DNA of 64,000 nt from Neoconidiobolus thromboides FSU 785 (taxonomy: Eukaryota; Fungi; Entomophthoromycota), in NCBI GenBank assembly GCA_025603075.1, contig MU626296.1, positions 62,001 through 126,000 on the forward strand. Direction: 5' to 3'. Both the position numbers and the translations under genes were made by a program. The notes below the pieces were generated by a model. It saw nothing but the letters and a program-made list of their open reading frames with translations, did not search any database and was not told the origin of the DNA. How positions within the stretch are numbered: the first letter of the stretch is position 1; each line of letters opens with the position of its first letter. This document shows, piece after piece, positions 1,237 through 13,228 of the stretch.

Positions 1237-4200
1237 TTATTGAATAGCTTTACCACCAAGGATCTTAGCTAACATAGCATGTACTTGAGCTCCAACCAAT
1301 TCATTAGTGGATCGAATAGTAGCTCTAAACATCTAGAAAAACAATAAAATAAAATGAGTATATACAAAACAAACAACTTACTTGCTGATCCAAATTCGGC
1401 TCCACCCTAAATAAGCAACCAAATTTACCTTCATTACCGCAATAAGCTACCCCAGCTGCTACGATATTATTTGGATTTGGATCCAAACCATCCAAGATAT
1501 CAATATTTAATCCAAGTAGTACTTTTTTAACCTTACTAATATCAATATTAACACCTGATCTAAAAACTGCTTGGGTCTCCCTTGGAGCACCTCCAATTTG
1601 TTTCCATCGTGGGAAAAAATCTTGTGGTTGAATTTTAGCTGGTCCTAAAAAGCTTAACATTACAGCTGGTAGTTTAAATAATATAGATTGTGCTCCATTA
1701 GTAATATAAGTAAGTCTAAGATGAGGCACTTCAGTAATTGGAGCAATACAATCTACTTTAAAAATTTGATGTAGCTGGGATTTGGGTGGAATTTGAGATG
1801 GAATAGATTGAATAACACTAATTGTAAGTCCAGGTACTCCTCCTTTTTTAGCTGGCACAAATTTTAAACTGGATAATTGGACACCTAATTTATTACCAAC
1901 ATATAATGAAATCTTTCCAGAATTACCACTATATTCACTTTTAAAACCCAATTGTAATTGATCATCTTCAAACAAAATGCCACTCCTAGTAAATAAAGCA
2001 CGTTCAAAGTAAGTTTCTGTGTTAGCATGAACTTTTGCAGAAGGTGAATTAGTTGAACCAGTTTCATTAATACCAAGTAAATCTGAGTCCATACTTTTAC
2101 TCTTTTCTTTTTTATCCTTTTCCATAATACTCCATGTTCTTTTGTCTTCTGTATCCGCGTTCTTTTTATATAAACAATTAACTAATGCTGATTCTCTTTC
2201 TGGGAAAGGTGGCATTTCCTCGCAAATTGTTTGTAAAATATCATCATTTGGCATATTAACTACAGTAAAATATTCACATGCTCTTTGTTGCAATTCAGAA
2301 TCTAAAATATGACGATATTGATTTAAAACGGAACTAACTTGCGGTTTAATTTCTGGAAATAAATTGACTAATTTTATATATGTAGTTAAAAGTAAGGCAC
2401 GAGTAGGCAAACTACACATACTAAATTTAGCATGTAAAGTAGTAAATTGTTCAATGGGTGTACATTGTGGTAGATTAACAATTAAATGACCAAATTCACC
2501 TAATATATACCCACCCACTTTAACCGCTGTTTCATGATAAGCTGAATTACGTAAACTAGCTAATACTGTTTTAGCCGCGTATTCTTGTAAATCTTCATTA
2601 TTAGTGACAATTTGTACTACACGGTACCAGACTTCTTCAGAAACATAATCACCAGCAGCAGCAATTAATTGTAATATAGTATCTACATACCAAGAATATT
2701 CTGTAGCAAATTTTTCAGTTAAAATAGCAATTTTCAGTACCATTTCTTCTCTAATATTATAATCAGCTGTTGATAATACTCTTAACAACTCAGCTACAAT
2801 TACTTTAGCATTGGTAACATCACACATGGAATATAATAAATCTAAAGCTCGACGACGTACACTAATATCTTTATCTTTTAATGAGGAGATAACTATATCT
2901 TGGTGTTCTTTAATTGCGTCTAAGGATTTTGTATAGGCAGCTAAATGAGCCATTGCTTCAAGTGAAAGATATCGAACATTGGTTTCTCGAGAAGAAATAA
3001 ATCTACCAAGTAAAACAGTGGATTCAGCTACTAATGTAGAATCGCTATCTAAATGAATGGATAATGAAATAGCTTCAAAAAGGACTGCATTTTGAGCATT
3101 AGTATGTTGTACATTTTTACTTTGATCTTGGGAAGAGGAAATAATGGCATGTAACACATTGTTTAGTTTTTGTAGCAAATGACGATCAACTTTAATATAG
3201 AAAAAAACAATTAGTTATTACTAACAATAATACATAATACATAATTTTACCTGGAGGTGGATAATACTGTAAAAATTTCAAAATTTTAACTTGAAGCCAA
3301 GGGATTGGTACTTTATAATAGACATAGTCATTGGAATATTCTTTTTCTACAATGATCTAATAAATTAACGAATTATCAATTTTATTATTCAAAAATAGTT
3401 TATTAAATCTTACCTTATAAAGTCGGTTAATAAGAATTGGAATTGCATTTTTAAAATCCGCTTGATAAGTTTGAGCTAATGCAAGTACAAGACTAGTAGT
3501 ACAAAGAACAACACCCTAAAATAAAAATATTATTTAAAATTATTTAAAAAATCAGCAAAAAATAAAACTAACTAAATCATGGTCATCAAGTAAATTAACA
3601 AAAGAAGAAGCCCAATCTCTAGCAGGAATAACATCAGGATGTTTTCTATAAAGACGAAGTAAAGTTAGGGCTGCTTTCTTTTTAACAAAATTTCGGTGAT
3701 TTCTATAAATGTTTCAATTTTTTAGTATAAAGACTTGAAATAAATAATAGTAAAAAAATTTACCCAAGTAATAATCGATGAACATCAGAAGCCAAAACTT
3801 CAGACATTTGTCTACCACCGATATTAGCAATAGCATGTAATGCTAAACAATTAAATATTTCATTGTAATCTTCCAAATCTCTTTTTAAATTATTAATAAC
3901 CATCCGAATTAAATCTGAATTTTCATTTAGCATTAAAGTAATAGCTAAATAACCCTTTTGTAATAAAATTATTAGTTAGTTATCATTTATTAAAAATATA
4001 AAGAAAAGAGTAGAATCAAAAACTTACAATTTGTTTTTCACTATATTTATTAGAAGATATTAATTGTACTGCTTCAGCATGTCCAAAATCAATATCCCAA
4101 CCTAATATATACATGTATAATAATTTGCATACATATTTCTTTTTATGATAACCACTTAAACCAGCATCTGTGTTTTTAATTTAGTAAAAGTATTATATGT

Positions 4201-4405
4201 AATTCGTATTTGTTTTTTACCTTTAAATTTAGTACGTATATTAGCCATCTCTTTATTAATCCTCTTATCTTCAGCCTCACGCACACGACCTTTATTTAAA
4301 GTATTATTATATATCAAATATATATATAATGACATTTGTATTAATAAATTACTACTTACATTTTCTCAAGTCAGCAATAAACACAGTCAATCCTCGCATC
4401 GACAT
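1237..4405 (-). CDS. APL3: AP-2 adaptor complex alpha subunit (alpha-adaptin), multi-exon
   Basis: Starts [15 protein letters not shown] (ATG 4405). The 617-aa ORF has [52 protein letters not shown] and the ear domain. The last exon [11 protein letters not shown]...AIQ ends at TAA 1237-1239. Confidence 0.95.
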
Positions 4406-4879
4406 TTTTTAAAATATCACTTAAAAGATTAAATTGAGTTCAACTCGGTTGAATCAAGTAAATTTTTTTGAGAGTGGTTAACCAATAAGATTAAGCTTTG
4501 CTAATGGGTTACACAGAACATTTGTAATACTAAAAGTTGGGTTATTGGTGGCTTAAATTTTTGATAAAAATTTCAAGTGTTTGTAGTGAAAACAAAAGTA
4601 TATTGAAACAAAAAGGAAAATTAATATTATATTATATTTTAATCTGTGTTATTGTTTATTGTACATATATTATTAAAATTTTAATAAATGATTTTATTCA
4701 ATCTTTTTAGTTTTTTAGAATTTCATTAGAATCTTGGAAGTTAAAAAGTTTCAAAGTTTTAGAATTAAGATAAATTACTAAATTTAGTCAACTTTATTGA
4801 AAAGAATCAAATATCCATCATTATCAAATTAACTTTTTCTAATCAAAAAATTGCAATCTTCATCTTACCAACTCCATTT

Positions 4880-7800
4880 ATGAAAACGTCACATAAAACG
4901 AGTTCGATAAATGCACCAAGTAAACTCAAGATATTGGTAGTACCTGTGGGTAGCATTCAACGGTCTAAATTTTTTAATTATTTCAATTTACTACAAAATT
5001 ATTCCACAGTATCATGTTCTGAATTAATTAAAAGTAGTCCAATGATTCAATCTAGATTAGAAAAAAAACTATATTTAGAAGGAAAAATCCATATTGAGTT
5101 TATTTTAGAATATAACCCAAATCATCAACTATTTGAAGATATTCAAACTTTTAGGAAAATTTTTGGTGTAAGTATATTAGTTGGAAGATGAAGTTAAGAT
5201 TAAGTTAATGATTGAATAGGTTATTGGTATTATGGATAGCCAACAAAATGAACGTAAATTTGAATCTTATTGTCAATTTTTAGATTATACGAAAAAAGTA
5301 TTTTTATTTTATTTTTAAACTTAGTTTATCAGCTCATTTAAATTTTATCATTTAAAATTCTTTAGTTTCCTACTGCTATATCCAATTTATGTTATTCTTT
5401 TCAAACTCCTGATAATAGTCAACCAATTGAAGGAGTTATCAATGTACCTATGGAAGTGGATATGGAATTTTATATCAAATTATCATTATATGATTTTTTA
5501 TCTAAAATTATTGATTTTTGTTGTGATACGGTAAATTTATTTAAAGCAACACAACTAATTTTCAATATTCAATTAATAACTCTATTTTATATTTTAGGCT
5601 GATAAATTATATAGTAATAATTCAGGCTTTTTATCGCCTCCAACTTCTAGTTTAGAAATGCCTAATAATAACTTTAACCCTGCTTTTAGTCCCCATAAAC
5701 GCTCTATATCTTTTCAAATGGATTTGTCATCAAGAGTATTAGATTTAGCTAACTCAGTAGGATTAGGTAATGATGGCAAAATAAAAAAACAAACTTCTGG
5801 AAGAAATTTAAAAATAATTGCAGATTATTATTTATTATGTGGAAGATATCCAGAAGCTAGTCAAATGTAAGTTGAATTAATGTCTATAAATGACAATAAG
5901 AAATTAATTGTTTTATATTAATTTAGGTATTTAAAAGCCATTGATATAACTAGAAATAATGGAGATAATCTATATTATTTAGGTTGTTTGGAAGGCTATT
6001 ATTGTACATTACTATGTTTATGTTTAATTGACAAAGATTTAATGGTAAATTTAATTAAGAAAAAAAAATAGAATAGAGTAAAATAGAATATTAAACTAAT
6101 AATACCTTCCTCTTTTTAATTTATTAATCAAATAATGTAGAAAACCTCTTCTTATCAAGGTAGTCCTGATGAATTATTAATGACCATAGCAGATAGTTAC
6201 TTTAAAGAAATGATTAAATTATATGAAGAATCACCACATCCCTTATTGTATATTGAAGCTTATTTAAAATTAGCAAAAATATTAACAGTTATGTGGAAGA
6301 TGCAAGATTTTAAATTAGGTATTCAAATGTTAATGGAGGATCAATTTGATCAAGGATATACTGTAAATAGTAATGATAATAATAATGAGGGACAAATACC
6401 AAAAAGAAAAGTTAATAGAGCAGATGTAACTGCTTGGACTATGTGTGCTTGGAATCCAACCATGAATTATTTAAGCTTAGGGGATAAAGTAATAATAATA
6501 CAAGTTTGATAAAAATAAATTTAATTCTAATGTATTTAATAGATTGATGTATTTTCTACAATGGCAGATATCTTTGGAACTTTAGGTTATAAAAGAAAAC
6601 AATCCTTTTTTTTAAGACATGCATTTTTATTAGTATTTCCGTCTTTAGTACAATCGAGTGCACAAAGAGAACAAACTATTTTAAATGAAAATCAAAACAC
6701 AATTAAATTTTCATTAAATCGAATTTGTTTGGGTTATAATATCAATGTTGTTGAGCCAGATAATGAAATTTGTAAAGAAATCGAAATGAGTGAAAATAAT
6801 AATCTAGGTTGGATTGAAATTCAAAAAGATATACTAAAAGAATGTATTGCTATGGAAGAAGCCTTTTCAGGTAAATTATTTATAATTTGTTTTATATAAT
6901 TTAATTTAATTTATATTCAATTTAATTTTAAAAAGATTATCAACAAATGTGTATTTATTTATTACATTATTTGCTATTGTTTTATCCGTATTTAACTAAA
7001 ATTGATCAAGATGAAATTTATAAATCTTTAATGTATAAAATTCAATTTAATGCCATCTTGCCATTTAATTTTAATATTACAAAAGCATTAAAAAACTTTG
7101 TTCAATTTAAAAGAATTATGTAAGTTAATTATATACATATATATTAATCATATATAAAAATTAATTTGGGATAGTAATTAATTAACTGTGATTCTGTTTT
7201 CTAGTAAAGATTCAAGTAAAGAGTTTTCAGAATTAAAAATTAAGAACATCGACAATAATTTGGATGATCGACCTTTTTTCTTTAATTCTACAAGGATAGC
7301 GGTAAAAGAAGAAAAGGTAAGTTTGATTTTATGTAAAATTATAATATTCAATTTATTAAAATAAACTTATTATAGATATTATTAGCTATGAATGAAAAAG
7401 TAGAAATACATTTCGTAATTAACAACCCACTAAGAATTGGATTAGAATTAGAAAATATTAGTTTAATGTAAGTAATAATAATATAGAGAAATTTGTATTA
7501 AATTTAATTATTATATTTATCTAGTACAGAAGGTGTTGATATTACTTATAAATTAGAAAATCATGTATTACCACCTAAATCAAGTTATTTATTACCATTA
7601 ACATTTATACCAACTACTATTGGAAATTTAAAAATATTGGGATTAAAGAGTAAATTATTAGGTTGTAAAGAACAAGAATTTTATTTAAATGATAATAATA
7701 ATAATAATAATAATAATAATCAAAGGTAATTTAATTTAATATTTTAATATATAATATATAATAATCTATTAAATTATTTACTTTGTTTAGTTTATTACAA

Positions 7801-8153
7801 AGTAAGTCAATACATAATATAATTTAAACGGGTTTTATTGAAATATTTTTTAGCAACAAATGTAAATAAAATATCAGAATTTGAAATTATCAATCCACAA
7901 CCTTATATAAAAATAATTGATGCTTCATTATCTCAGCCAATGGTAATGTTATATGAAGGAGAAAGGTAAAAAAATTATAACAATTGTTATATTTATTATA
8001 TTTATTTAATTTGATTTTTATTTAATAGCACTGAATTTACAATAACAATAGAGAATGATAGTGAAATTGATGTTAATTTGATTAATTTTTCATTTGAACA
8101 TTTACAATGCAATATAAATAATTCAATTAAATTTAATAATAAAAATGAGTTAG

Positions 8154-8218
<65 letters not shown>

Positions 8219-9636
8219 TCAAATAAAATTGAATTATTAGAATGTATAAATAAAAATGAGGTTAATTATTTAAAGAGTGGGGAAAGTAAAATATTAAAGT
8301 TAAAAGCATTTGGTAAATTAAATTAGTAAGCTTTATTATTATTCTTATATTATAATTACAATAATTATATTTTAAAATAGTAATCAATCCACATTAATAT
8401 TAAGCTATGGTAATATTAATGTTAAAGAACAAGATAAAGTTAGTAAAACAGTTGTGCGTAAGAAAACATACAAAGTGAATTTTACAGTAATACCCACATT
8501 AATACCATTATCTTTTGATATAATAATAGATTCAGAAGCTTCAATTAATTTATTTCAAAAAGAATATCAACAATATTTAAATAATCAAAATATCATTAAT
8601 GATCGACACAAATATTGTTTATTATGTTTCGAATTTAAAAATAATAATTCTATTTTAGTTAATTTAAATATTAATATCAATATTAATGATGATGAGTTTC
8701 AATTTCAACATTCTCTAAAAGAATCTATTTCAGGATCTGAAATTAAAAGAATTTTAATACCATTTAAAAGATATTTATTACCAAAAGAATTAATAAATAA
8801 TAATCAAATAATAACAAATAATAATAATAATAATAAGATGGAAAGAGAATATCAATTATATAAAAAAGAACTATTGAATAAAATTCAAGTTCAATGGGAA
8901 ATGGTAAGTTTTATTAAATAATAATAACATATTTATTAATTAATATTCTAATCATTAGACAAACGAAAACCGAAATGGACTATTAAATTTAGATTGGATA
9001 AAAATCAATAATAATAATTATAATCAATTAAAATTAAATGATATATTTCTATTTACATCTTTAAAAGTAATGAATTTAAATGAAAATGAAAATTTAATTC
9101 AATTTGATGCATTTAATTATCAATGTAAATTAAATACAATATTGAAATTTAATATACAAATTAAAAATTATAAAGGTAAATCAATTAATTATATACATTA
9201 ATATTATAATATACTAATAAACTATTTTTTATATATTTCTTTATTATATTCTATAGATACAAGTATTAAACCTCAATTAAAATTAATAGCCTATTTAGAC
9301 TTTGTTAATGGAAAAGTGGAAAGTATTAACAATAATAATAATAGCAATAAAGGAATAATAATTGAACCTAAAATAGCACCAATAATAATATTAGGATCAG
9401 ATCAAAAATTAATATCTAAAATTAATTCTAATGAAATATATGAAACCTATTTTGTAATATTACTTAATGGAATTGGAGATATTAATTTAGGGTGTTTAGC
9501 AATTGATTTTTATAATAAAATTAATAATGAACAAATTGGAAAGAATAATGAAATAGATCAAATGAATTTAGAAGAATTAAAGAATCAAAATTTAGTTTTA
9601 GATTTAGCACCTATTAATTTAAAAATTATTAATTAA
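4880..9636 (+). CDS. TRS120: TRAPP II complex subunit Trs120/TRAPPC9, multi-exon
   Basis: LKILVVPVGSI, KKQTSGRNLKIIADYYLLCGRY and ADIFGTLGYKRKQSFFLR motifs; successive + strand ORFs are joined by short GT-AG introns. Confidence 0.85.
7694..7720 (+). repeat. (AAT)9 coding microsatellite, poly-Asn in Trs120
   Basis: Direct read of the sequence. Confidence 0.9.
8156..8218 (+). repeat. (AAT)21 coding microsatellite, poly-Asn in Trs120
   Basis: Direct read; ORF 8078..8326 shows 21 consecutive Asn. Confidence 0.95.
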
Positions 9637-9660
9637 AATATTGAAAGTTAAAAAAAAGAG

Positions 9661-9765
9661 TTTATTTATTTATTTATTTATTTATTTTATTTTATTTATT
9701 TTATTTATTTTATTTATTTTATTTATTTATTTATTTTATTTATTTATTTATTTATTTAATTTTAT
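9661..9765. repeat. (TTTA)n/(TTTTA)n low-complexity tract downstream of TRS120
   Basis: Direct read of the sequence. Confidence 0.85.
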
Positions 9766-10221
9766 TAAAAATGAATTTTAACTTATTTTTTATTATTTAG
9801 AATAATATTCACAATTACTTGAAGTTATTAAATTATTTTTTATTTTAAATTTAATAAAGTATAATAAAATAAATAAAATAGACATAATAAAACAATTTTA
9901 GTTTGAGATAGTTCAATAAACAAGGATTTGATTTTGAAACAATAACGACAATAGCAATTTATTAAATATTATATTAAACTAAATAATAATAATAATAATA
10001 TTCAATTAATAAATTAATAAATTTAATAAATCAATAAAAGAATAATAATGATTTAAATATGACTTAAAAAAATATTTAAGCACCAATTTTTCCACACTTA
10101 AAAACTAAGAAAGACTATTGGTCCACGTCACGAAAAGAAAGTATAAAATTTAAAAATTAATATTTAATTTTAATATTAATCCAACTTTTGCTTTAACTTC
10201 AATATTAATTTTCAGTCCATT

Positions 10222-11745
10222 ATGAGTGATCAAAGTAGCGAATATTCTTATAATGAACATTATAGTGATGAAGAAATGGGTCCGAAACTATGGGGAGGAG
10301 CTTTTTATTGTGGTACACATGATATTGCTGATAAGTTAAATTATACAATTCAAAACGATAAATTTTTATATAAACAAGAAATACAAGTCTCTTTAGCCTA
10401 TTGTGAAGCATTGCATGATATTAACATTTTAACATCTGAAGAACTAATTCAGGTTCAACAAGGTTATTCTACTATTTTAAAAGAATGGGAAGAAAATCAA
10501 TTTATTATTGAAAACACAGATGAAGATATTTATACTGCTAATGAAAGAAGATTAGTTGAATTAATAGGTCCTACTGGTTCTAAAATAGGAACTGGAAAAT
10601 CAAGGGATAGTCATTCAAGTACAGTATTAAGATTATGGTTAAGAGAAGAAATTAAAGAATTAATATTAATGTATAAAAAAACAATATTAAATGTAGTCAA
10701 AAGAGCAGAAGATGATAAAGACTTAGTTATGCCAGGACATACTCATAATCAATTAGCTGAACCTATCCGTTATTCTCATTTGTTATTAAGTTATGGATTT
10801 AAATTTCAACAAGATATTGAAAGAATTGAACAAGTTTTAAAACATATTAATCAATTTCCATTAGGCGGTGGTGGTTACGCAGGTATTAATTATAATATTG
10901 ATTTAAATAAATTAGCAAAACAACTTGAATTTGATGGAATTATAAAAAACTCTATTAATGCAGTAGCTGATCGTACATTTATAATGGAATTTTTATTTTG
11001 GGCTTCAATTACGGGATTAAATTTTTCACAATTATCTGAAGAAATGTTAAAATTAGATTGTTATGGTTATATTCATCCTAATCCAGTTCATGAAACTGGT
11101 TCAAGTTATTATGCTCATCAAAGTCATGCTAATTGTTTAGAAGTTTTAAGAAGTAAAGCAGGTATTATTTTTGGAAAGGTAATAATAGAAACTATTATTT
11201 ATTATATTTTATTAATTCTATTTATCTTATTTTATTTTGTTTTTTAGTTAACTGGATTTATGATGACAAGTAAATCCTTATCTAATGGTCCGAATAAAGA
11301 TTTTAATGAAGCTAATCAATTAATATTTGATACAGTTAATATATTAAAACAATGTATACCAATGGTAGGTCAATTTATAAGATTATTAACTGTAGATAAT
11401 ATTAGTATGAAACAAAAGCTAAATGAAGCTTTATTATGTAATGAAGCTATCAAATATTTGGTATTAAAAGAAGTACCATATCGACAAGCTCATCATATAA
11501 TTGGTAAAATTAAATCCCAAGTACCAATTAAATCTAATTCTTCTATGTTTAAATTACCAATGAAAGTATTAACTCAATTTAGTAATAAATTTGATGAAGA
11601 TTTTCAACAATTACATGAGAAATATGAAGATGCTGTTAATAATTGTAATAATATTGGAGGTACTTCTTTAGATTCTATAAATAAACAAATTGAAGAATTA
11701 AAACAATGGTTAAATATTACAGAAGAAGAGTTTAGTAATAGTTAA
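10222..11745 (+). CDS. Argininosuccinate lyase-like protein (fumarase/aspartase superfamily) with divergent active site; one intron about 11180-11247
   Basis: KLWGG, EDIYTANERRL, PGHTHNQLAEP, EFLFWAS, LRSKAG and PYRQAH align colinearly with ASL/ARG4; the signature GSSxMPQKKNP is replaced by GSSYYAHQSHA. Confidence 0.9.
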
Positions 11746-11782
11746 ATGAGAAGTTAATTACAGATTTAATAAAATTATTTTA

Positions 11783-11820: not shown

Positions 11821-12220
11821 GTCATATTATTGTATTTATTTTTATTTTATTTATTTTATTTTTATTTTTATTATATATTCATTACTATTATTTAATCTGT
11901 TCTATTATTATTCTTTAATATATTAATATTAATATTATCTTTTTTAATATTAATAGCATTGATTATATTATTTATTCTAGCTAAATTAAATTTATTGTAT
12001 TATTAATCATACTGTATCAATTCCAATAATAAATTGAATTCATTTAATTCTTTTTAAAAGTGACGTAAGAATTGGAAAATATAGCTAATTTTTATATAAA
12101 TAGTAAAGTTTAAGGGATACAAATTAAAACATACATGATCATTTGAAGTATCATAATTATTGAAACCTTTATTTTTAAATTCTATTATTTTATCTTTTAC
12201 TTTGATTAAGTTTAAATTTG

Positions 12221-13228
12221 ATGCCACATTCAAATAAATTCAATATCAATAATAATTATAAATTAGCTTATTGTGCTTTATTAACTAAAGAATCATATAC
12301 TCCAGGTGCTCATGCGTTAGTTATCTCCCATTCACAAGTAGCTAGCAAATATCCTTTACTCTTCCTCATCAGTTCTGAGATAACTTTAGAAACTCAAAAG
12401 AAATTAAGATTATCTAATCCCAAAGTGATATTTCAACAAGTAGATTTAATTTATCCCAAAGATAAATCTATTGAATCATGTTATGCCTTCTCACATTTTT
12501 CAGAAGTATGGACTAAATTACAATGTTTTTCGTTAGAACAATATGATTATTTATGTTGTCTAGATTGTGATATGTTATTTTTAAAAAATCTAGATGAATT
12601 CTTAGAATTAGCATCAAATAAGATATTACATCGATCCAAGTTTAACTATAAAAAAGAAGTTCGATTTCCTGAAAATACAACTAATTTAATGGCATGTCAT
12701 GCTTGTGTTTGTAACCCTATGAAAAGAAAAAATTACCCAAAATGGTGGCAACCTATGAACTGTGCTTATAGTAATAGTATGAATGTAGAAAATAGAATTG
12801 ATGTAGAAAATCATTGGAATGAAGTTCAAGTTGATGAATGGAATACATTACTTGAGTTTCCAACTTTAAAAAAAAGTTATTTTAATACAGGTTTATTTAT
12901 CATTAGTCCTAATCTTCAAACTTATCAACATTTATATGAGATTGTAATCAATTTAAATTCTAAGAATTGTATTTATCAATTTCCAGAACAAGATTTATTA
13001 AATTTATTTTTTTATAAGTCTTGGGAAGCATTACCATTGTCTTTGAATTTTTTAAAAACTATTGTTATCTCTCATCCAGAGTTAGTTAATTTAGATAAAG
13101 TTAGAAATTTGCATTTTATTATGGATAAACCTTGGAATTTTGATTTTGAAGATGAGGAAGATTTATTTTTTGAATTAAATATGAAATGGAGAGAGGTGTT
13201 TAATAATGAGAAGAAGTTGATTCAATAA
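12221..13228 (+). CDS. Glycosyltransferase family 8 (glycogenin/galactinol-synthase-like), single exon
   Basis: AYCALLTKESY, WTKLQCFSLEQYD, LDCD (DxD motif), ACHACVCNP, YFNTGLF, FPEQDLLN and HFIMDKPW motifs. Confidence 0.9.
   Translation: MPHSNKFNINNNYKLAYCALLTKESYTPGAHALVISHSQVASKYPLLFLISSEITLETQKKLRLSNPKVIFQQVDLIYPKDKSIESCYAFSHFSEVWTKLQCFSLEQYDYLCCLDCDMLFLKNLDEFLELASNKILHRSKFNYKKEVRFPENTTNLMACHACVCNPMKRKNYPKWWQPMNCAYSNSMNVENRIDVENHWNEVQVDEWNTLLEFPTLKKSYFNTGLFIISPNLQTYQHLYEIVINLNSKNCIYQFPEQDLLNLFFYKSWEALPLSLNFLKTIVISHPELVNLDKVRNLHFIMDKPWNFDFEDEEDLFFELNMKWREVFNNEKKLIQ

What the first reader, a model, noticed from the sequence alone, without database searches (positions are those of the whole stretch)
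10222..11745. Intact argininosuccinate lyase paralogue with a rewired active site (pseudoenzyme or new lyase)
Seen: a full-length open two-exon gene colinear with ASL, with these replacements: signature GSSLMPQKKNPD becomes GSSYYAHQSHAN, GRSRNDQ becomes GKSRDSH, EDIH becomes EDIY, and YNKDLQEDK becomes PNKDFNEAN. The catalytic Ser (GSS), the TH of region 2 and the downstream Glu are kept, and there is an acidic N-terminal extension. Established: the Met/Lys/Asn of the SSxMPxKxN loop bind the fumarate moiety across the fumarase/aspartase superfamily, the YNKDLQEDK block binds the arginine moiety, and delta1-crystallin is a precedent for an inactive ASL duplicate. Inference: this protein cannot be the housekeeping ARG4. 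It is either a non-catalytic, structural or regulatory subunit (for example in heterotetramers with ARG4) or acts on a new substrate.
Basis: partly seen in the sequence, partly recalled or inferred. Interest (0 to 1): 0.72.

Follow-up and report, generated by a model that had tools for sequence, protein, structure and literature searches.

The report
Expressed, rewired argininosuccinate lyase duplicate
The fungus Neoconidiobolus thromboides transcribes and preserves under selection a second copy of the arginine-pathway enzyme argininosuccinate lyase whose substrate-binding residues have been replaced, so it almost certainly does something other than make arginine, while a normal copy elsewhere in the genome does that job.

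Summary
Window 10222-11745 holds a two-exon gene of Neoconidiobolus thromboides FSU 785, annotated publicly as 'L-Aspartase-like protein'. It has the argininosuccinate lyase (ASL) domains and fold.

- **Motifs.** Ser-Ser, Thr-His, Glu294 and Lys323 are kept.
- **Extent of change.** It departs from the family residue at 31 of 84 columns that are at least 90% conserved. Its paralogue departs at 1, and the median is 2.
- **All three refutation tests fail.**
  - A canonical ASL lies on contig C1, with a Gcn4 site in its promoter.
  - Contigs from two studies skip exactly the predicted 69-nt intron and match the window across every rewired motif.
  - A second haplotype gives dN/dS 0.08.
- **Origin.** It is an entomophthoralean duplicate with about 6.5 times more unique changes than its sister copy. 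No closer relative than ordinary ASLs turned up among 15 billion proteins. It lies beside Trs120, where a relative keeps a canonical-type ASL.

Verdict: a functional ASL-derived protein that is no longer an argininosuccinate lyase. Whether it is a pseudoenzyme (my lean) or a lyase with a new substrate is unresolved. It is a new variant of a known kind, of moderate interest.

The parts
10222..11178 (+). Exon 1 of the divergent ASL paralogue (319 codons), holding the N-terminal and central helical domains and conserved regions C1, C2 and C3.
   Evidence: The ORF is. Pfam finds Lyase_1 at E 2.3e-46. TIGR00838 positions 1-300 score 251 bits. A run X1 contig covers 10191-11176 with 0 differences.
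11179..11247 (+). The single intron, 69 nt, GT..AG, placed after the codon for the Lys of FGK. The first intron of the canonical paralogue sits at the same position.
   Evidence: Contigs in all 4 runs laid skip exactly these 69 bases. P0002 and P0003 both break after FGK/YGK.
11248..11745 (+). Exon 2 (165 codons plus TAA), holding the rest of the helical domain and the C-terminal ASL_C2 domain. The second intron of the canonical gene (after MLTV) is absent here.
   Evidence: Pfam finds ASL_C2 at E 1.4e-9. TIGR00838 positions 301-454 score 82.6 bits.
10222..10275 (+). Acidic N-terminal extension. The public model P0001 splices out 10235-10273 (39 nt, 13 codons), and that joint was not seen.
   Evidence: The sequence of P0001 is. 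The X1 contig is continuous from 10191, and no joint is reported there in any of the 4 runs.
10522..10533 (+). EDIY in place of EDIH. The His is 99% conserved among 269 relatives.
   Evidence: H91Y in P0001 numbering.
10594..10614 (+). Region C1, GKSRDSH in place of GRSRNDQ. Ser114 and Arg115 are kept; N116D, D117S, Q118H and R113K are changed.
   Evidence: In haplotype H2 the Asp and Ser codons differ only synonymously.
10735..10752 (+). Region C2, GHTHNQ. Thr161 and His162 (the proposed general base) are kept.
   Evidence: T161 and H162 are invariant columns. The role of the His is described in PMC2779060.
11098..11133 (+). Region C3, the flexible 'SS loop': GSSYYAHQSHAN in place of GSSLMPQKKNPD. 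Gly-Ser-Ser and the loop length are kept. M284Y, P285A, Q286H, K287Q, N289H and D291N are changed. Glu294 just downstream is kept.
11290..11316 (+). PNKDFNEAN in place of YNKDLQEDK. Y321P, Q326N, D328A and K329N are changed. Lys323, Asp324 and Glu327 are kept.
   Evidence: The roles of K323 and E327 at the subunit interface are described in PMC2779060.
9637..10221 (+). Upstream intergenic region (12.5% G+C). It has no Gcn4-type TGASTCA site. An ACGTCA half-site lies at -97 and TATAAA at -80.
   Evidence: The canonical gene has TGACTCA at -94, and the relative's canonical-type gene has TGAGTCA at -109.
4904..9636 (+). Neighbouring single-copy TRAPPII Trs120 gene. It is not part of the gene, but it marks the locus for the synteny argument. 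The end coordinate is taken from the last open frame upstream of the gene and was not checked.
   Evidence: Pfam finds TRAPPC9-Trs120 on 8454-8918. It is the only Trs120 locus in the genome. The relative's Trs120 fragments match window 5946-8915.

Best explanation
This is a transcribed, correctly spliced and selectively maintained duplicate of the fungal argininosuccinate lyase gene (ARG4/ASL) that no longer cleaves argininosuccinate.

Shown here:
- It descends from the entomophthoralean ASL.
- It keeps the whole ASL fold.
- It has replaced the residues that the family keeps for the fumarate and arginine moieties. The loop Lys and Asn are lost, along with the Asn-Asp-Gln of region 1, the His of EDIH, and the Tyr, Gln and Lys of the YNKDLQEDK block.
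- A normal ASL with a Gcn4 site does the housekeeping job elsewhere in the genome.

Inferred, and my commitment: it most likely acts as a non-catalytic ASL-fold protein, a pseudoenzyme. It would still assemble into ASL-type tetramers and work by binding a ligand or partner rather than by turning over a substrate. Its own homotetramer seems more likely than mixed tetramers with the canonical enzyme.

Its history looks like a burst of fast change after duplication, followed by renewed constraint that holds the new sequence in place.
For: - **Homology and fold.** Pfam finds Lyase_1 plus ASL_C2. The AlphaFold2 model has pLDDT 93.5 and pTM 0.91. Foldseek gives TM 0.91-0.96 to duck delta-2 crystallin and human ASL.
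- **Loss of family residues.** 31 of 84 columns at least 90% conserved are replaced, against 1 in the paralogue and a median of 2. They include K287Q and N289H, which are 98% conserved, and N116D, which is 99% conserved.
- **Canonical copy.** P0002 on contig C1 has all motifs. TGACTCA lies at -94 in its promoter, and there is none upstream of this gene. argG is present.
- **Expression.** Spliced contigs occur in 4 runs from 2 studies.
- **Selection.** dN/dS is 0.084 over 188 codons, p 5e-11. The frame is open for 484 codons at 26% G+C, where a random frame stays open with probability 3e-22.
- **Acceleration.** It has 129 unique changes against 20 in the paralogue, with Entomophthora as outgroup, p 4e-19. 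Its end branch is 6.02 against 0.19.
- **Assembly residues kept.** H162, E294 and K323 form an inter-subunit hydrogen-bond triad, and K315 and E327 hold the double dimer together (PMC2779060). All five are retained.
- **Complex prediction.** The heterodimer with P0002 scored 0.77, with the best of 3 controls at 0.00. That mark was reached by 51 of 78 solved complexes and 2 of 108 mismatched pairs. The runs agree in at least 93% of contacts, and the partner's pLDDT is at least 86. This shows likeness to the ASL dimer, not binding.
- **Spread of the changes.** The changes lie all over the conserved positions, not only in the pocket. By my recollection of which residues contact the substrate, roughly half of about 16 contact positions changed, against about a third of the other conserved columns (my own tally over, not computed). 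This looks more like a general release from catalytic constraint than a targeted redesign of the pocket.
Against: - The catalytic core is intact: Gly-Ser-Ser of the flexible loop, Thr161/His162 and Glu294. The loop also kept its exact length. Other degenerate ASL-likes lose these residues, or delete part of the loop as Octopus P0130 does. That is what a substrate switch would look like.
- The replacements are polar and rich in His (Q118H, Q286H, N289H), so they could form a new site.
- The predicted dimer interface is not better preserved than the rest of the protein: 40% against 45% of canonically conserved sites are replaced, p 0.59.
- There is no protein-level data of any kind.
- No orthologue from another named species was found, so long-term conservation of the new motifs is unknown.
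- The role of the loop Lys and Asn is taken from my knowledge of the superfamily, not tested here.
Confidence: 0.5

Rival explanations
1. It is a real enzyme with a new substrate. On this reading it is an ASL-fold lyase that keeps the Ser/His/Glu acid-base machinery. Its pocket has been rebuilt so that it no longer accepts a succinyl (dicarboxylate) adduct. His residues at 118, 286 and 289 would take over the roles of the lost Gln, Lys and Asn.
For: - Ser281, Ser282, Thr161, His162, Glu294 and Lys323 are retained, and the SS loop has the same length.
- Selection on the present sequence is strong: dN/dS 0.084, and the new Asp and Ser codons of region C1 change only synonymously between haplotypes.
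- A burst of change followed by constraint is the classic mark of neofunctionalisation.
- ASL-like enzymes with other substrates exist, such as DabC (PMC10906522).
Against: - To my knowledge, every characterised active member of the superfamily keeps the loop Lys. DabC still releases fumarate.
- Three positive charges are lost (R14A, K287Q, K329N) and one negative charge is gained (N116D), which argues against any fumarate-releasing chemistry.
- The changes are not concentrated in the pocket.
- There is no gene-cluster context pointing to a pathway. The neighbours are Trs120 and a GT8 glycosyltransferase.
Confidence: 0.33
2. It is still an argininosuccinate lyase: a second, divergent isozyme with low or conditional activity.
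For: The two exon scores to the argH equivalog model add up to 332 bits, above the 279.5-bit cut-off. The catalytic Ser and His are kept.
Against: - K287, N289, N116, Y321, Q326 and K329 are conserved in 91-99% of 269 relatives, and all are replaced.
- The canonical copy scores 415 bits on its first exon alone.
- The Gcn4 element present at both canonical-type genes is absent here.
- 6.5 times more unique changes than the sister copy is not how a conserved isozyme behaves.
Confidence: 0.05
3. It is a duplicate on its way to becoming a pseudogene, with no function. Its transcription would be a leftover.
For: It has a very long branch and an odd amino-acid make-up. Its GC3 has fallen to 9%, against 26% in the canonical copy, which suggests weak codon selection. 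It has no detectable orthologue elsewhere.
Against: - The reading frame is intact for 484 codons at 26% G+C (P 3e-22 for a random frame).
- The intron is kept, and the contigs skip it exactly.
- dN/dS between haplotypes is 0.084, with 25 synonymous against 10 non-synonymous changes.
- The model is confidently folded.
Confidence: 0.04

Closest known systems
Canonical argininosuccinate lyase (fungal ARG4; P0002 of the same genome; human ASL, PDB 1K62/1AOS)
   Same: It has the same domain architecture and fold (TM 0.91-0.96). Its first intron is at the same position. It keeps Ser-Ser, Thr-His, Glu294, Lys323, Lys315 and Glu327. It is 45% identical to P0002.
   Different: 31 of 84 near-invariant positions are replaced, including the loop Lys and Asn, the SRND block, the His of EDIH, and the Tyr, Gln and Lys of the YNKDLQEDK block. 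It has no Gcn4 site, has lost intron 2, carries an acidic N-terminal extension, and has about 6.5 times more unique changes.
Delta-1 crystallin of birds (inactive ASL duplicate used as a lens protein; PDB 1HY0, 1I0A)
   Same: Both are ASL duplicates that have lost ASL activity, sit beside an active copy, and keep the fold and tetramer (PMC2779060; fold match).
   Different: Delta-1 is over 90% identical to the active delta-2 (PMC2779060) and, by my recollection, keeps the catalytic signatures. Here the signatures themselves are rewritten and identity to the active copy is only 45%. There is no evidence of bulk structural use.
Enzyme-prozyme pairs (for example TbPRMT1 ENZ/PRO heterotetramers; inactive ALDH2 variant in heterotetramers), reviewed in PMC10211241
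   Same: Both involve a dead paralogue of an oligomeric enzyme that could join its active sister. The heterodimer prediction passes its controls (0.77 against 0.00; the reference counts are given in the For line).
   Different: Binding was not shown. A close relative of a true partner usually passes this test. The interface is not preferentially conserved, and the promoters differ.
DabC, an ASL-like lyase of 2,3-diaminobutyrate biosynthesis (PMC10906522)
   Same: It is an ASL-fold protein recruited to a substrate other than argininosuccinate.
   Different: DabC still eliminates fumarate from an aspartate adduct and sits in a bacterial operon. The fungal protein has lost the residues that I take to bind fumarate and has no pathway context.
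Other degenerate ASL-like proteins found here: Octopus 'argininosuccinate lyase-like' (P0130) and metagenomic P0137, P0166 and P0225
   Same: They are independent ASL homologues with broken C1, C2 or C3 signatures.
   Different: They are unrelated lineages with different changes. The Octopus protein deletes three loop residues and loses Thr-His. P0137, P0166 and P0225 also lose Thr-His. None shares the YYAHQSHAN loop.

Membership tests
Fumarase/aspartase (Lyase_1) superfamily, ASL branch, by descent | Lyase_1 domain followed by the ASL_C2 domain | tested here: met
   PF00206 at E 2.3e-46 on exon 1 and PF14698 at E 1.4e-9 on exon 2.
Fumarase/aspartase (Lyase_1) superfamily, ASL branch, by descent | Three-domain, mostly helical ASL fold | tested here: met
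   AlphaFold2 pLDDT 93.5 and pTM 0.91. Foldseek TM 0.91-0.96 to duck delta-2 crystallin, human ASL and E. coli ASL.
Fumarase/aspartase (Lyase_1) superfamily, ASL branch, by descent | Groups with ASLs of its own fungal lineage in a tree | tested here: met
   It falls inside the Entomophthoromycotina clade (99/100*), in a 3-row clade with its own canonical copy (98/99*). The exact sister is not resolved (AU p 0.465 and 0.116).
Functional argininosuccinate lyase (argH/ARG4 equivalog) | Score above the TIGR00838 equivalog cut-off (279.5 bits) | tested here: inconclusive
   The exons score 251.2 and 82.6 bits separately and 332.2 when added. The canonical copy scores 415 bits on its first exon alone.
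Functional argininosuccinate lyase (argH/ARG4 equivalog) | C3 signature GSSxMPxKxN, with the loop Lys and Asn | tested here: not met
   The loop reads GSSYYAHQSHAN, with M284Y, P285A, K287Q and N289H. These columns are 95-98% conserved.
Functional argininosuccinate lyase (argH/ARG4 equivalog) | C1 signature S-R-N-D-Q | tested here: not met
   It reads S-R-D-S-H. The Asn is 99% conserved.
Functional argininosuccinate lyase (argH/ARG4 equivalog) | C2 Thr-His (general base) and the Glu that bonds to it | tested here: met
   T161, H162 and E294 lie in invariant columns and are retained.
Functional argininosuccinate lyase (argH/ARG4 equivalog) | Y-N-K-D-L-Q-E-D-K block | tested here: not met
   It reads P-N-K-D-F-N-E-A-N, with Y321P, Q326N, D328A and K329N.
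Functional argininosuccinate lyase (argH/ARG4 equivalog) | Cleaves argininosuccinate and complements arg4 | not testable with these tools
   This needs an enzyme assay or yeast complementation.
Functional argininosuccinate lyase (argH/ARG4 equivalog) | General amino-acid control element (Gcn4 site) in the promoter, as at the canonical-type genes | tested here: not met
   There is no TGASTCA in the 585 nt upstream. The canonical copy has one at -94 and the relative's gene has one at -109. This is supportive only, not a formal defining feature.
Pseudoenzyme that joins its active paralogue (prozyme type) | Forms hetero-oligomers with the active enzyme | tested here: inconclusive
   The complex prediction scored 0.77, with the best of 3 controls at 0.00. 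That mark was reached by 51 of 78 solved complexes and 2 of 108 mismatched pairs, with at least 93% contact agreement and partner pLDDT of at least 86. Close relatives of a true partner also pass, and the interface is not preferentially conserved.
Delta-1-crystallin-like recruited ASL | Very high, tissue-specific abundance as a structural protein | not testable with these tools
   Only assembled contigs were available, and their depth cannot rank expression.

The most novel reading that the evidence does not exclude
The protein is an active enzyme with chemistry new to the fumarase/aspartase superfamily. It would be an ASL-fold catalyst that keeps the Ser/His/Glu machinery but has dispensed with the otherwise universal loop Lys and Asn. 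It would use a His-rich rebuilt pocket (His118, His286, His289, Asp116) for a substrate that is not a dicarboxylate, possibly with a bound metal.
Probability: 0.2. Interest if true: 0.75.

Novelty: new variant of a known kind. Interest (0 to 1): 0.42.

Why it matters
- **A natural experiment on an invariant loop.** It shows the most conserved loop of the fumarase/aspartase superfamily being rewritten and then held under strong selection. That either defines a new pseudoenzyme built on the ASL scaffold or points to a new activity.
- **A clean evolutionary case.** The rewired copy lies beside Trs120, where a relative keeps a canonical-type ASL. The housekeeping function is carried by a copy at another locus.
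- **An annotation trap.** The summed score passes the argH cut-off, so pipelines and metabolic reconstructions would count two ASLs in this fungus.
- **A correction to the public gene model.** That model removes 13 codons as a 39-nt intron, and no contig shows that joint.

Tried and rejected
- **Orthologue searches.** The word search with exon 2 alone found nothing at E 1e-5 or better. That search only sees proteins of 91-289 aa, so this says little. The exon 1 word search and the exhaustive search found no protein closer to this one than ordinary ASLs. P0001 is alone in its 50% cluster, and the next hit is 39% identical.
- **Exact look-ups.** P0001, P0002 and P0007 are not on record in the contig collection.
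- **Timing of the duplication.** AU tests cannot reject a duplication older than the split from the ERR10900026 organism (p 0.465), or older than the entomophthoralean ASLs sampled (p 0.116).
- **Segmental duplication.** Nothing but the ASL gene itself is shared between the window and C1:1-10000.
- **Deeper synteny.** Smittium's ASL has no Trs120 neighbour.
- **Interface preservation.** There is no difference between predicted interface sites and other sites.
- **Papers.** The key structural paper PMC1134128 is not held, so the roles of individual substrate contacts rest on PMC2779060 and my own knowledge.
- **Calls that failed.** I then used stop-free pieces. A first large MAFFT run timed out and was redone.
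- **Horizontal transfer.** I rejected this origin because of the shared intron position and the placement in the tree.
Full report
**What is there.** Window 10222-11745 (+) holds a gene of two exons: 10222-11178 and 11248-11745, separated by a 69-nt GT..AG intron. Exon 1 matches Pfam Lyase_1 (E 2.3e-46) and exon 2 matches ASL_C2. The argH model TIGR00838 matches colinearly, at 251 and 83 bits. The best solved relatives are human ASL and duck delta-crystallins.

The word search identifies the organism as Neoconidiobolus thromboides FSU 785. The gene is the public protein P0001 (KAI9296521.1, 'L-Aspartase-like protein', 471 aa). Residue numbers below are those of P0001; add 13 for the 484-residue form.

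**The observation.**
- GKSRDSH stands for GRSRNDQ.
- EDIY stands for EDIH.
- GSSYYAHQSHAN stands for GSSLMPQKKNPD.
- PNKDFNEAN stands for YNKDLQEDK.
- Gly-Ser-Ser, Thr161-His162 and Glu294 are kept.

In an alignment of 100 ASLs, P0001 departs from the family residue at 31 of 84 columns that are at least 90% conserved. Its own paralogue departs at 1, the median is 2, and the next worst sequence departs at 12. The fold is nevertheless predicted with high confidence (pLDDT 93.5, pTM 0.91). It superposes on duck delta-2 crystallin and human ASL at TM 0.91-0.96.

1. *Is it the only ASL?* No. The genome holds a canonical ASL at C1:~4085-5581(-), which is P0002. All its signatures are intact, and it scores 415 bits over its first exon alone. 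Argininosuccinate synthase is present too. The two other Lyase_1 loci (C12, C191) are not ASL-like.
2. *Are the changes sequencing errors, and is it silent?* No to both. A 1491-nt contig of run X1 matches 10191-11176 joined to 11246-11750 with no differences, skipping exactly the predicted intron. Three runs of a second study show the same joint, and contigs with 0-1 differences cover 10305-11767. The X1 contig reads straight through the 39 nt (10235-10273) that the public model removes. No run shows a joint there, so the acidic N-terminal extension is in the message.
3. *Is dN/dS near 1?* No. The second study holds a second haplotype. Over the 188 codons it covers, it differs by 25 synonymous and 10 non-synonymous changes (Nei-Gojobori dS 0.27, dN 0.022, ratio 0.084). 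The excess of synonymous changes has p 5e-11. The new Asp and Ser codons of region C1 differ only synonymously. A frame open for 484 codons at 26% G+C would occur by chance with probability 3e-22.

**Origin.**
- *Tree.* The protein sits inside the Entomophthoromycotina clade (99/100*), in a clade of three with its own canonical copy and a canonical-type ASL from an unnamed relative (P0003, from a Logan contig of run ERR10900026) (98/99*). Its end branch is 6.02, against 0.19 for its sister.
- *Rate.* With Entomophthora as outgroup it has 129 unique changes against 20 in the canonical copy (p 4e-19). Three other outgroups agree.
- *Introns.* The first intron lies at the same codon in all three genes, which argues against horizontal transfer. 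The second intron of the canonical gene is missing here.
- *Timing.* Whether the duplication is younger or older than the split from the relative is not resolved by the tree (AU p 0.465).
- *Synteny.* In the relative's contig L015, the canonical-type ASL lies directly beyond the 3' end of Trs120, convergent with it. In the window the gene directly beyond the 3' end of Trs120 is the rewired one, in tandem orientation. Trs120 is single-copy in this genome. The canonical copy on C1 shares no flanks with the window. So the rewired copy appears to hold the old position, inverted, while the housekeeping role is carried from another locus. Smittium does not share the adjacency, so the adjacency is not ancient.
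- *Relatives elsewhere.* Among 15 billion proteins nothing is closer to P0001 than ordinary ASLs. It is alone in its 50% cluster, and the next hit is 39% identical.

**Regulation.** The canonical gene has a perfect Gcn4-type site, TGACTCA, at -94. The relative's canonical-type gene has TGAGTCA at -109. By my own estimate from base composition, the chance of one such site is about 0.04 and 0.02 respectively. The 585 nt upstream of the rewired gene have none. Third-position G+C is 9%, against 26% in the canonical copy. Both points suggest that the gene has left arginine-pathway control. This rests on motif presence only.

**How it most likely works.** PMC2779060 shows three things:
- The active site is built from conserved regions of different subunits.
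- His160/162 bonds the fumarate moiety and is taken to be the general base.
- Glu294, His160 and Lys323 from different monomers form one hydrogen-bond network, and Lys315 and Glu327 hold the double dimer together.

All five of these residues are kept here. The residues next to them are replaced (Q326N, D328A, K329N, K287Q, N289H).

From my own knowledge of the superfamily (not tested here), the loop Lys and Asn and the Asn of SRND hold the carboxylates of the substrate, and the Lys is needed for activity in fumarase, aspartase and ASL. Three positive charges are lost (R14A, K287Q, K329N) and one negative charge is gained (N116D). A succinyl adduct should therefore no longer bind. I conclude that the protein does not cleave argininosuccinate.

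- *For a non-catalytic role:* the changes are spread over conserved positions in general, not focused on the pocket.
- *For a new catalytic role:* the Ser-Ser, Thr-His and Glu core is retained, the loop keeps its length, and the new residues are polar and rich in His.

I put the pseudoenzyme reading at 0.5, a new substrate at 0.33, residual ASL activity at 0.05, and a decaying gene at 0.04.

**The heterotetramer idea.** A heterodimer with P0002 was predicted with a score of 0.77, against a best control of 0.00. That mark was reached by 51 of 78 solved complexes and 2 of 108 mismatched pairs. The runs agree in at least 93% of contacts, and the partner's pLDDT is at least 86. Close relatives of a true partner usually pass this test, so the result shows only that the protein still looks like an ASL subunit.

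Using the predicted interface, I found that sites conserved between two canonical ASLs are replaced in P0001 as often at the interface (31 of 77) as elsewhere (98 of 220), p 0.59. This gives no sign that a contact with the canonical enzyme is specially preserved. It fits a homotetramer, whose two faces can change together, a little better.

**Comparison with known cases.**
- *Delta-1 crystallin* is the classic inactive ASL duplicate. It is over 90% identical to the active delta-2 and, by my recollection, keeps the signatures.
- *Enzyme-prozyme pairs and heterotetramer-poisoning variants* are known in other families (PMC10211241).
- *DabC* is an ASL-like lyase with another substrate, but it still releases fumarate (PMC10906522).
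- *Other degenerate ASL-likes* turned up here as independent cases: an Octopus 'ASL-like' protein and several metagenomic ones. None shares this loop.

The gene is therefore a member of the ASL branch by descent. It fails three of the four sequence signatures that I take to define a working ASL.

**Limits.**
- No protein-level evidence exists.
- The haplotype comparison covers 188 of 484 codons and comes from assembled contigs of coded runs.

**Handling of the joined model.** The joined 484-residue model was not sent to any search or folding tool. Searches used the exons by reference or the public model P0001. Three local scripts joined the two exons: two for codon bookkeeping and dN/dS, and one for base composition.

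Noticed in passing
window 10235-10273: The public gene model (P0001, KAI9296521.1) removes these 39 nt as an intron. The run X1 contig reads through them, and none of the four runs shows a joint there. The real protein is therefore probably 484 aa, not 471.
   Followed up: yes
window 10305-11767 (runs X2, X3, X5): The two haplotypes of this transcript form a mosaic. They differ by 6.6% over 10305-10726 and at 7 sites in 11418-11472. Over 10727-11417 they share one contig whose depth equals the sum of the two, so they are identical there. That stretch holds the rewired loop. This suggests recent recombination or gene conversion, or a sweep of the central part.
   Followed up: partly
L015:166-1706 and L015:2619-5977; window 4904-11745: In an unnamed relative (Logan contig of ERR10900026), a canonical-type ASL lies next to the 3' end of Trs120, convergent with it. 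In the window the rewired ASL copy holds that place in the opposite orientation. The canonical copy of N. thromboides is on another contig, beside a carbonic anhydrase-like ORF.
   Followed up: yes
L016:~5675 (G000:C1), upstream of the canonical ASL start at 5581: A perfect Gcn4-type site, TGACTCA, lies 94 nt upstream of the canonical ASL start codon. The relative's gene has TGAGTCA at -109. The rewired copy has none in 585 nt.
   Followed up: partly
window 11248-11745 against L016:4085-4605: The rewired copy lacks the second intron of the canonical gene (after MLTV) but keeps the first. This is a precise loss of the 3' intron.
   Followed up: partly
window 12218-13228 (+): An intron-free glycosyltransferase family 8 gene (Pfam E 4.7e-15) lies 470 nt downstream on the same strand. 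I found no evidence of a functional link to the lyase-like gene.
   Followed up: partly
proteins P0130, P0137, P0166, P0225: Other ASL homologues have broken signatures. An Octopus 'argininosuccinate lyase-like' protein (549 aa) has a 3-residue deletion in the SS loop and has lost Thr-His. Three metagenomic proteins have lost Thr-His or the loop Lys. These are independent cases of ASL degeneration.
   Followed up: partly
window 10222-11745 against L016:4085-5581: Third-position G+C is 9% in the rewired copy and 26% in the canonical copy. Overall G+C is 26% against 36%.
   Followed up: yes
L016:~2560-3490 and 9410-10000 (G000:C1): Stretches of contig C1 near the canonical ASL are withheld and read as N, so the gene on the far side of the canonical ASL could not be read.
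   Followed up: no
Degenerate duplicates of metabolic enzymes may be a recurring feature of this genome.
   Followed up: no
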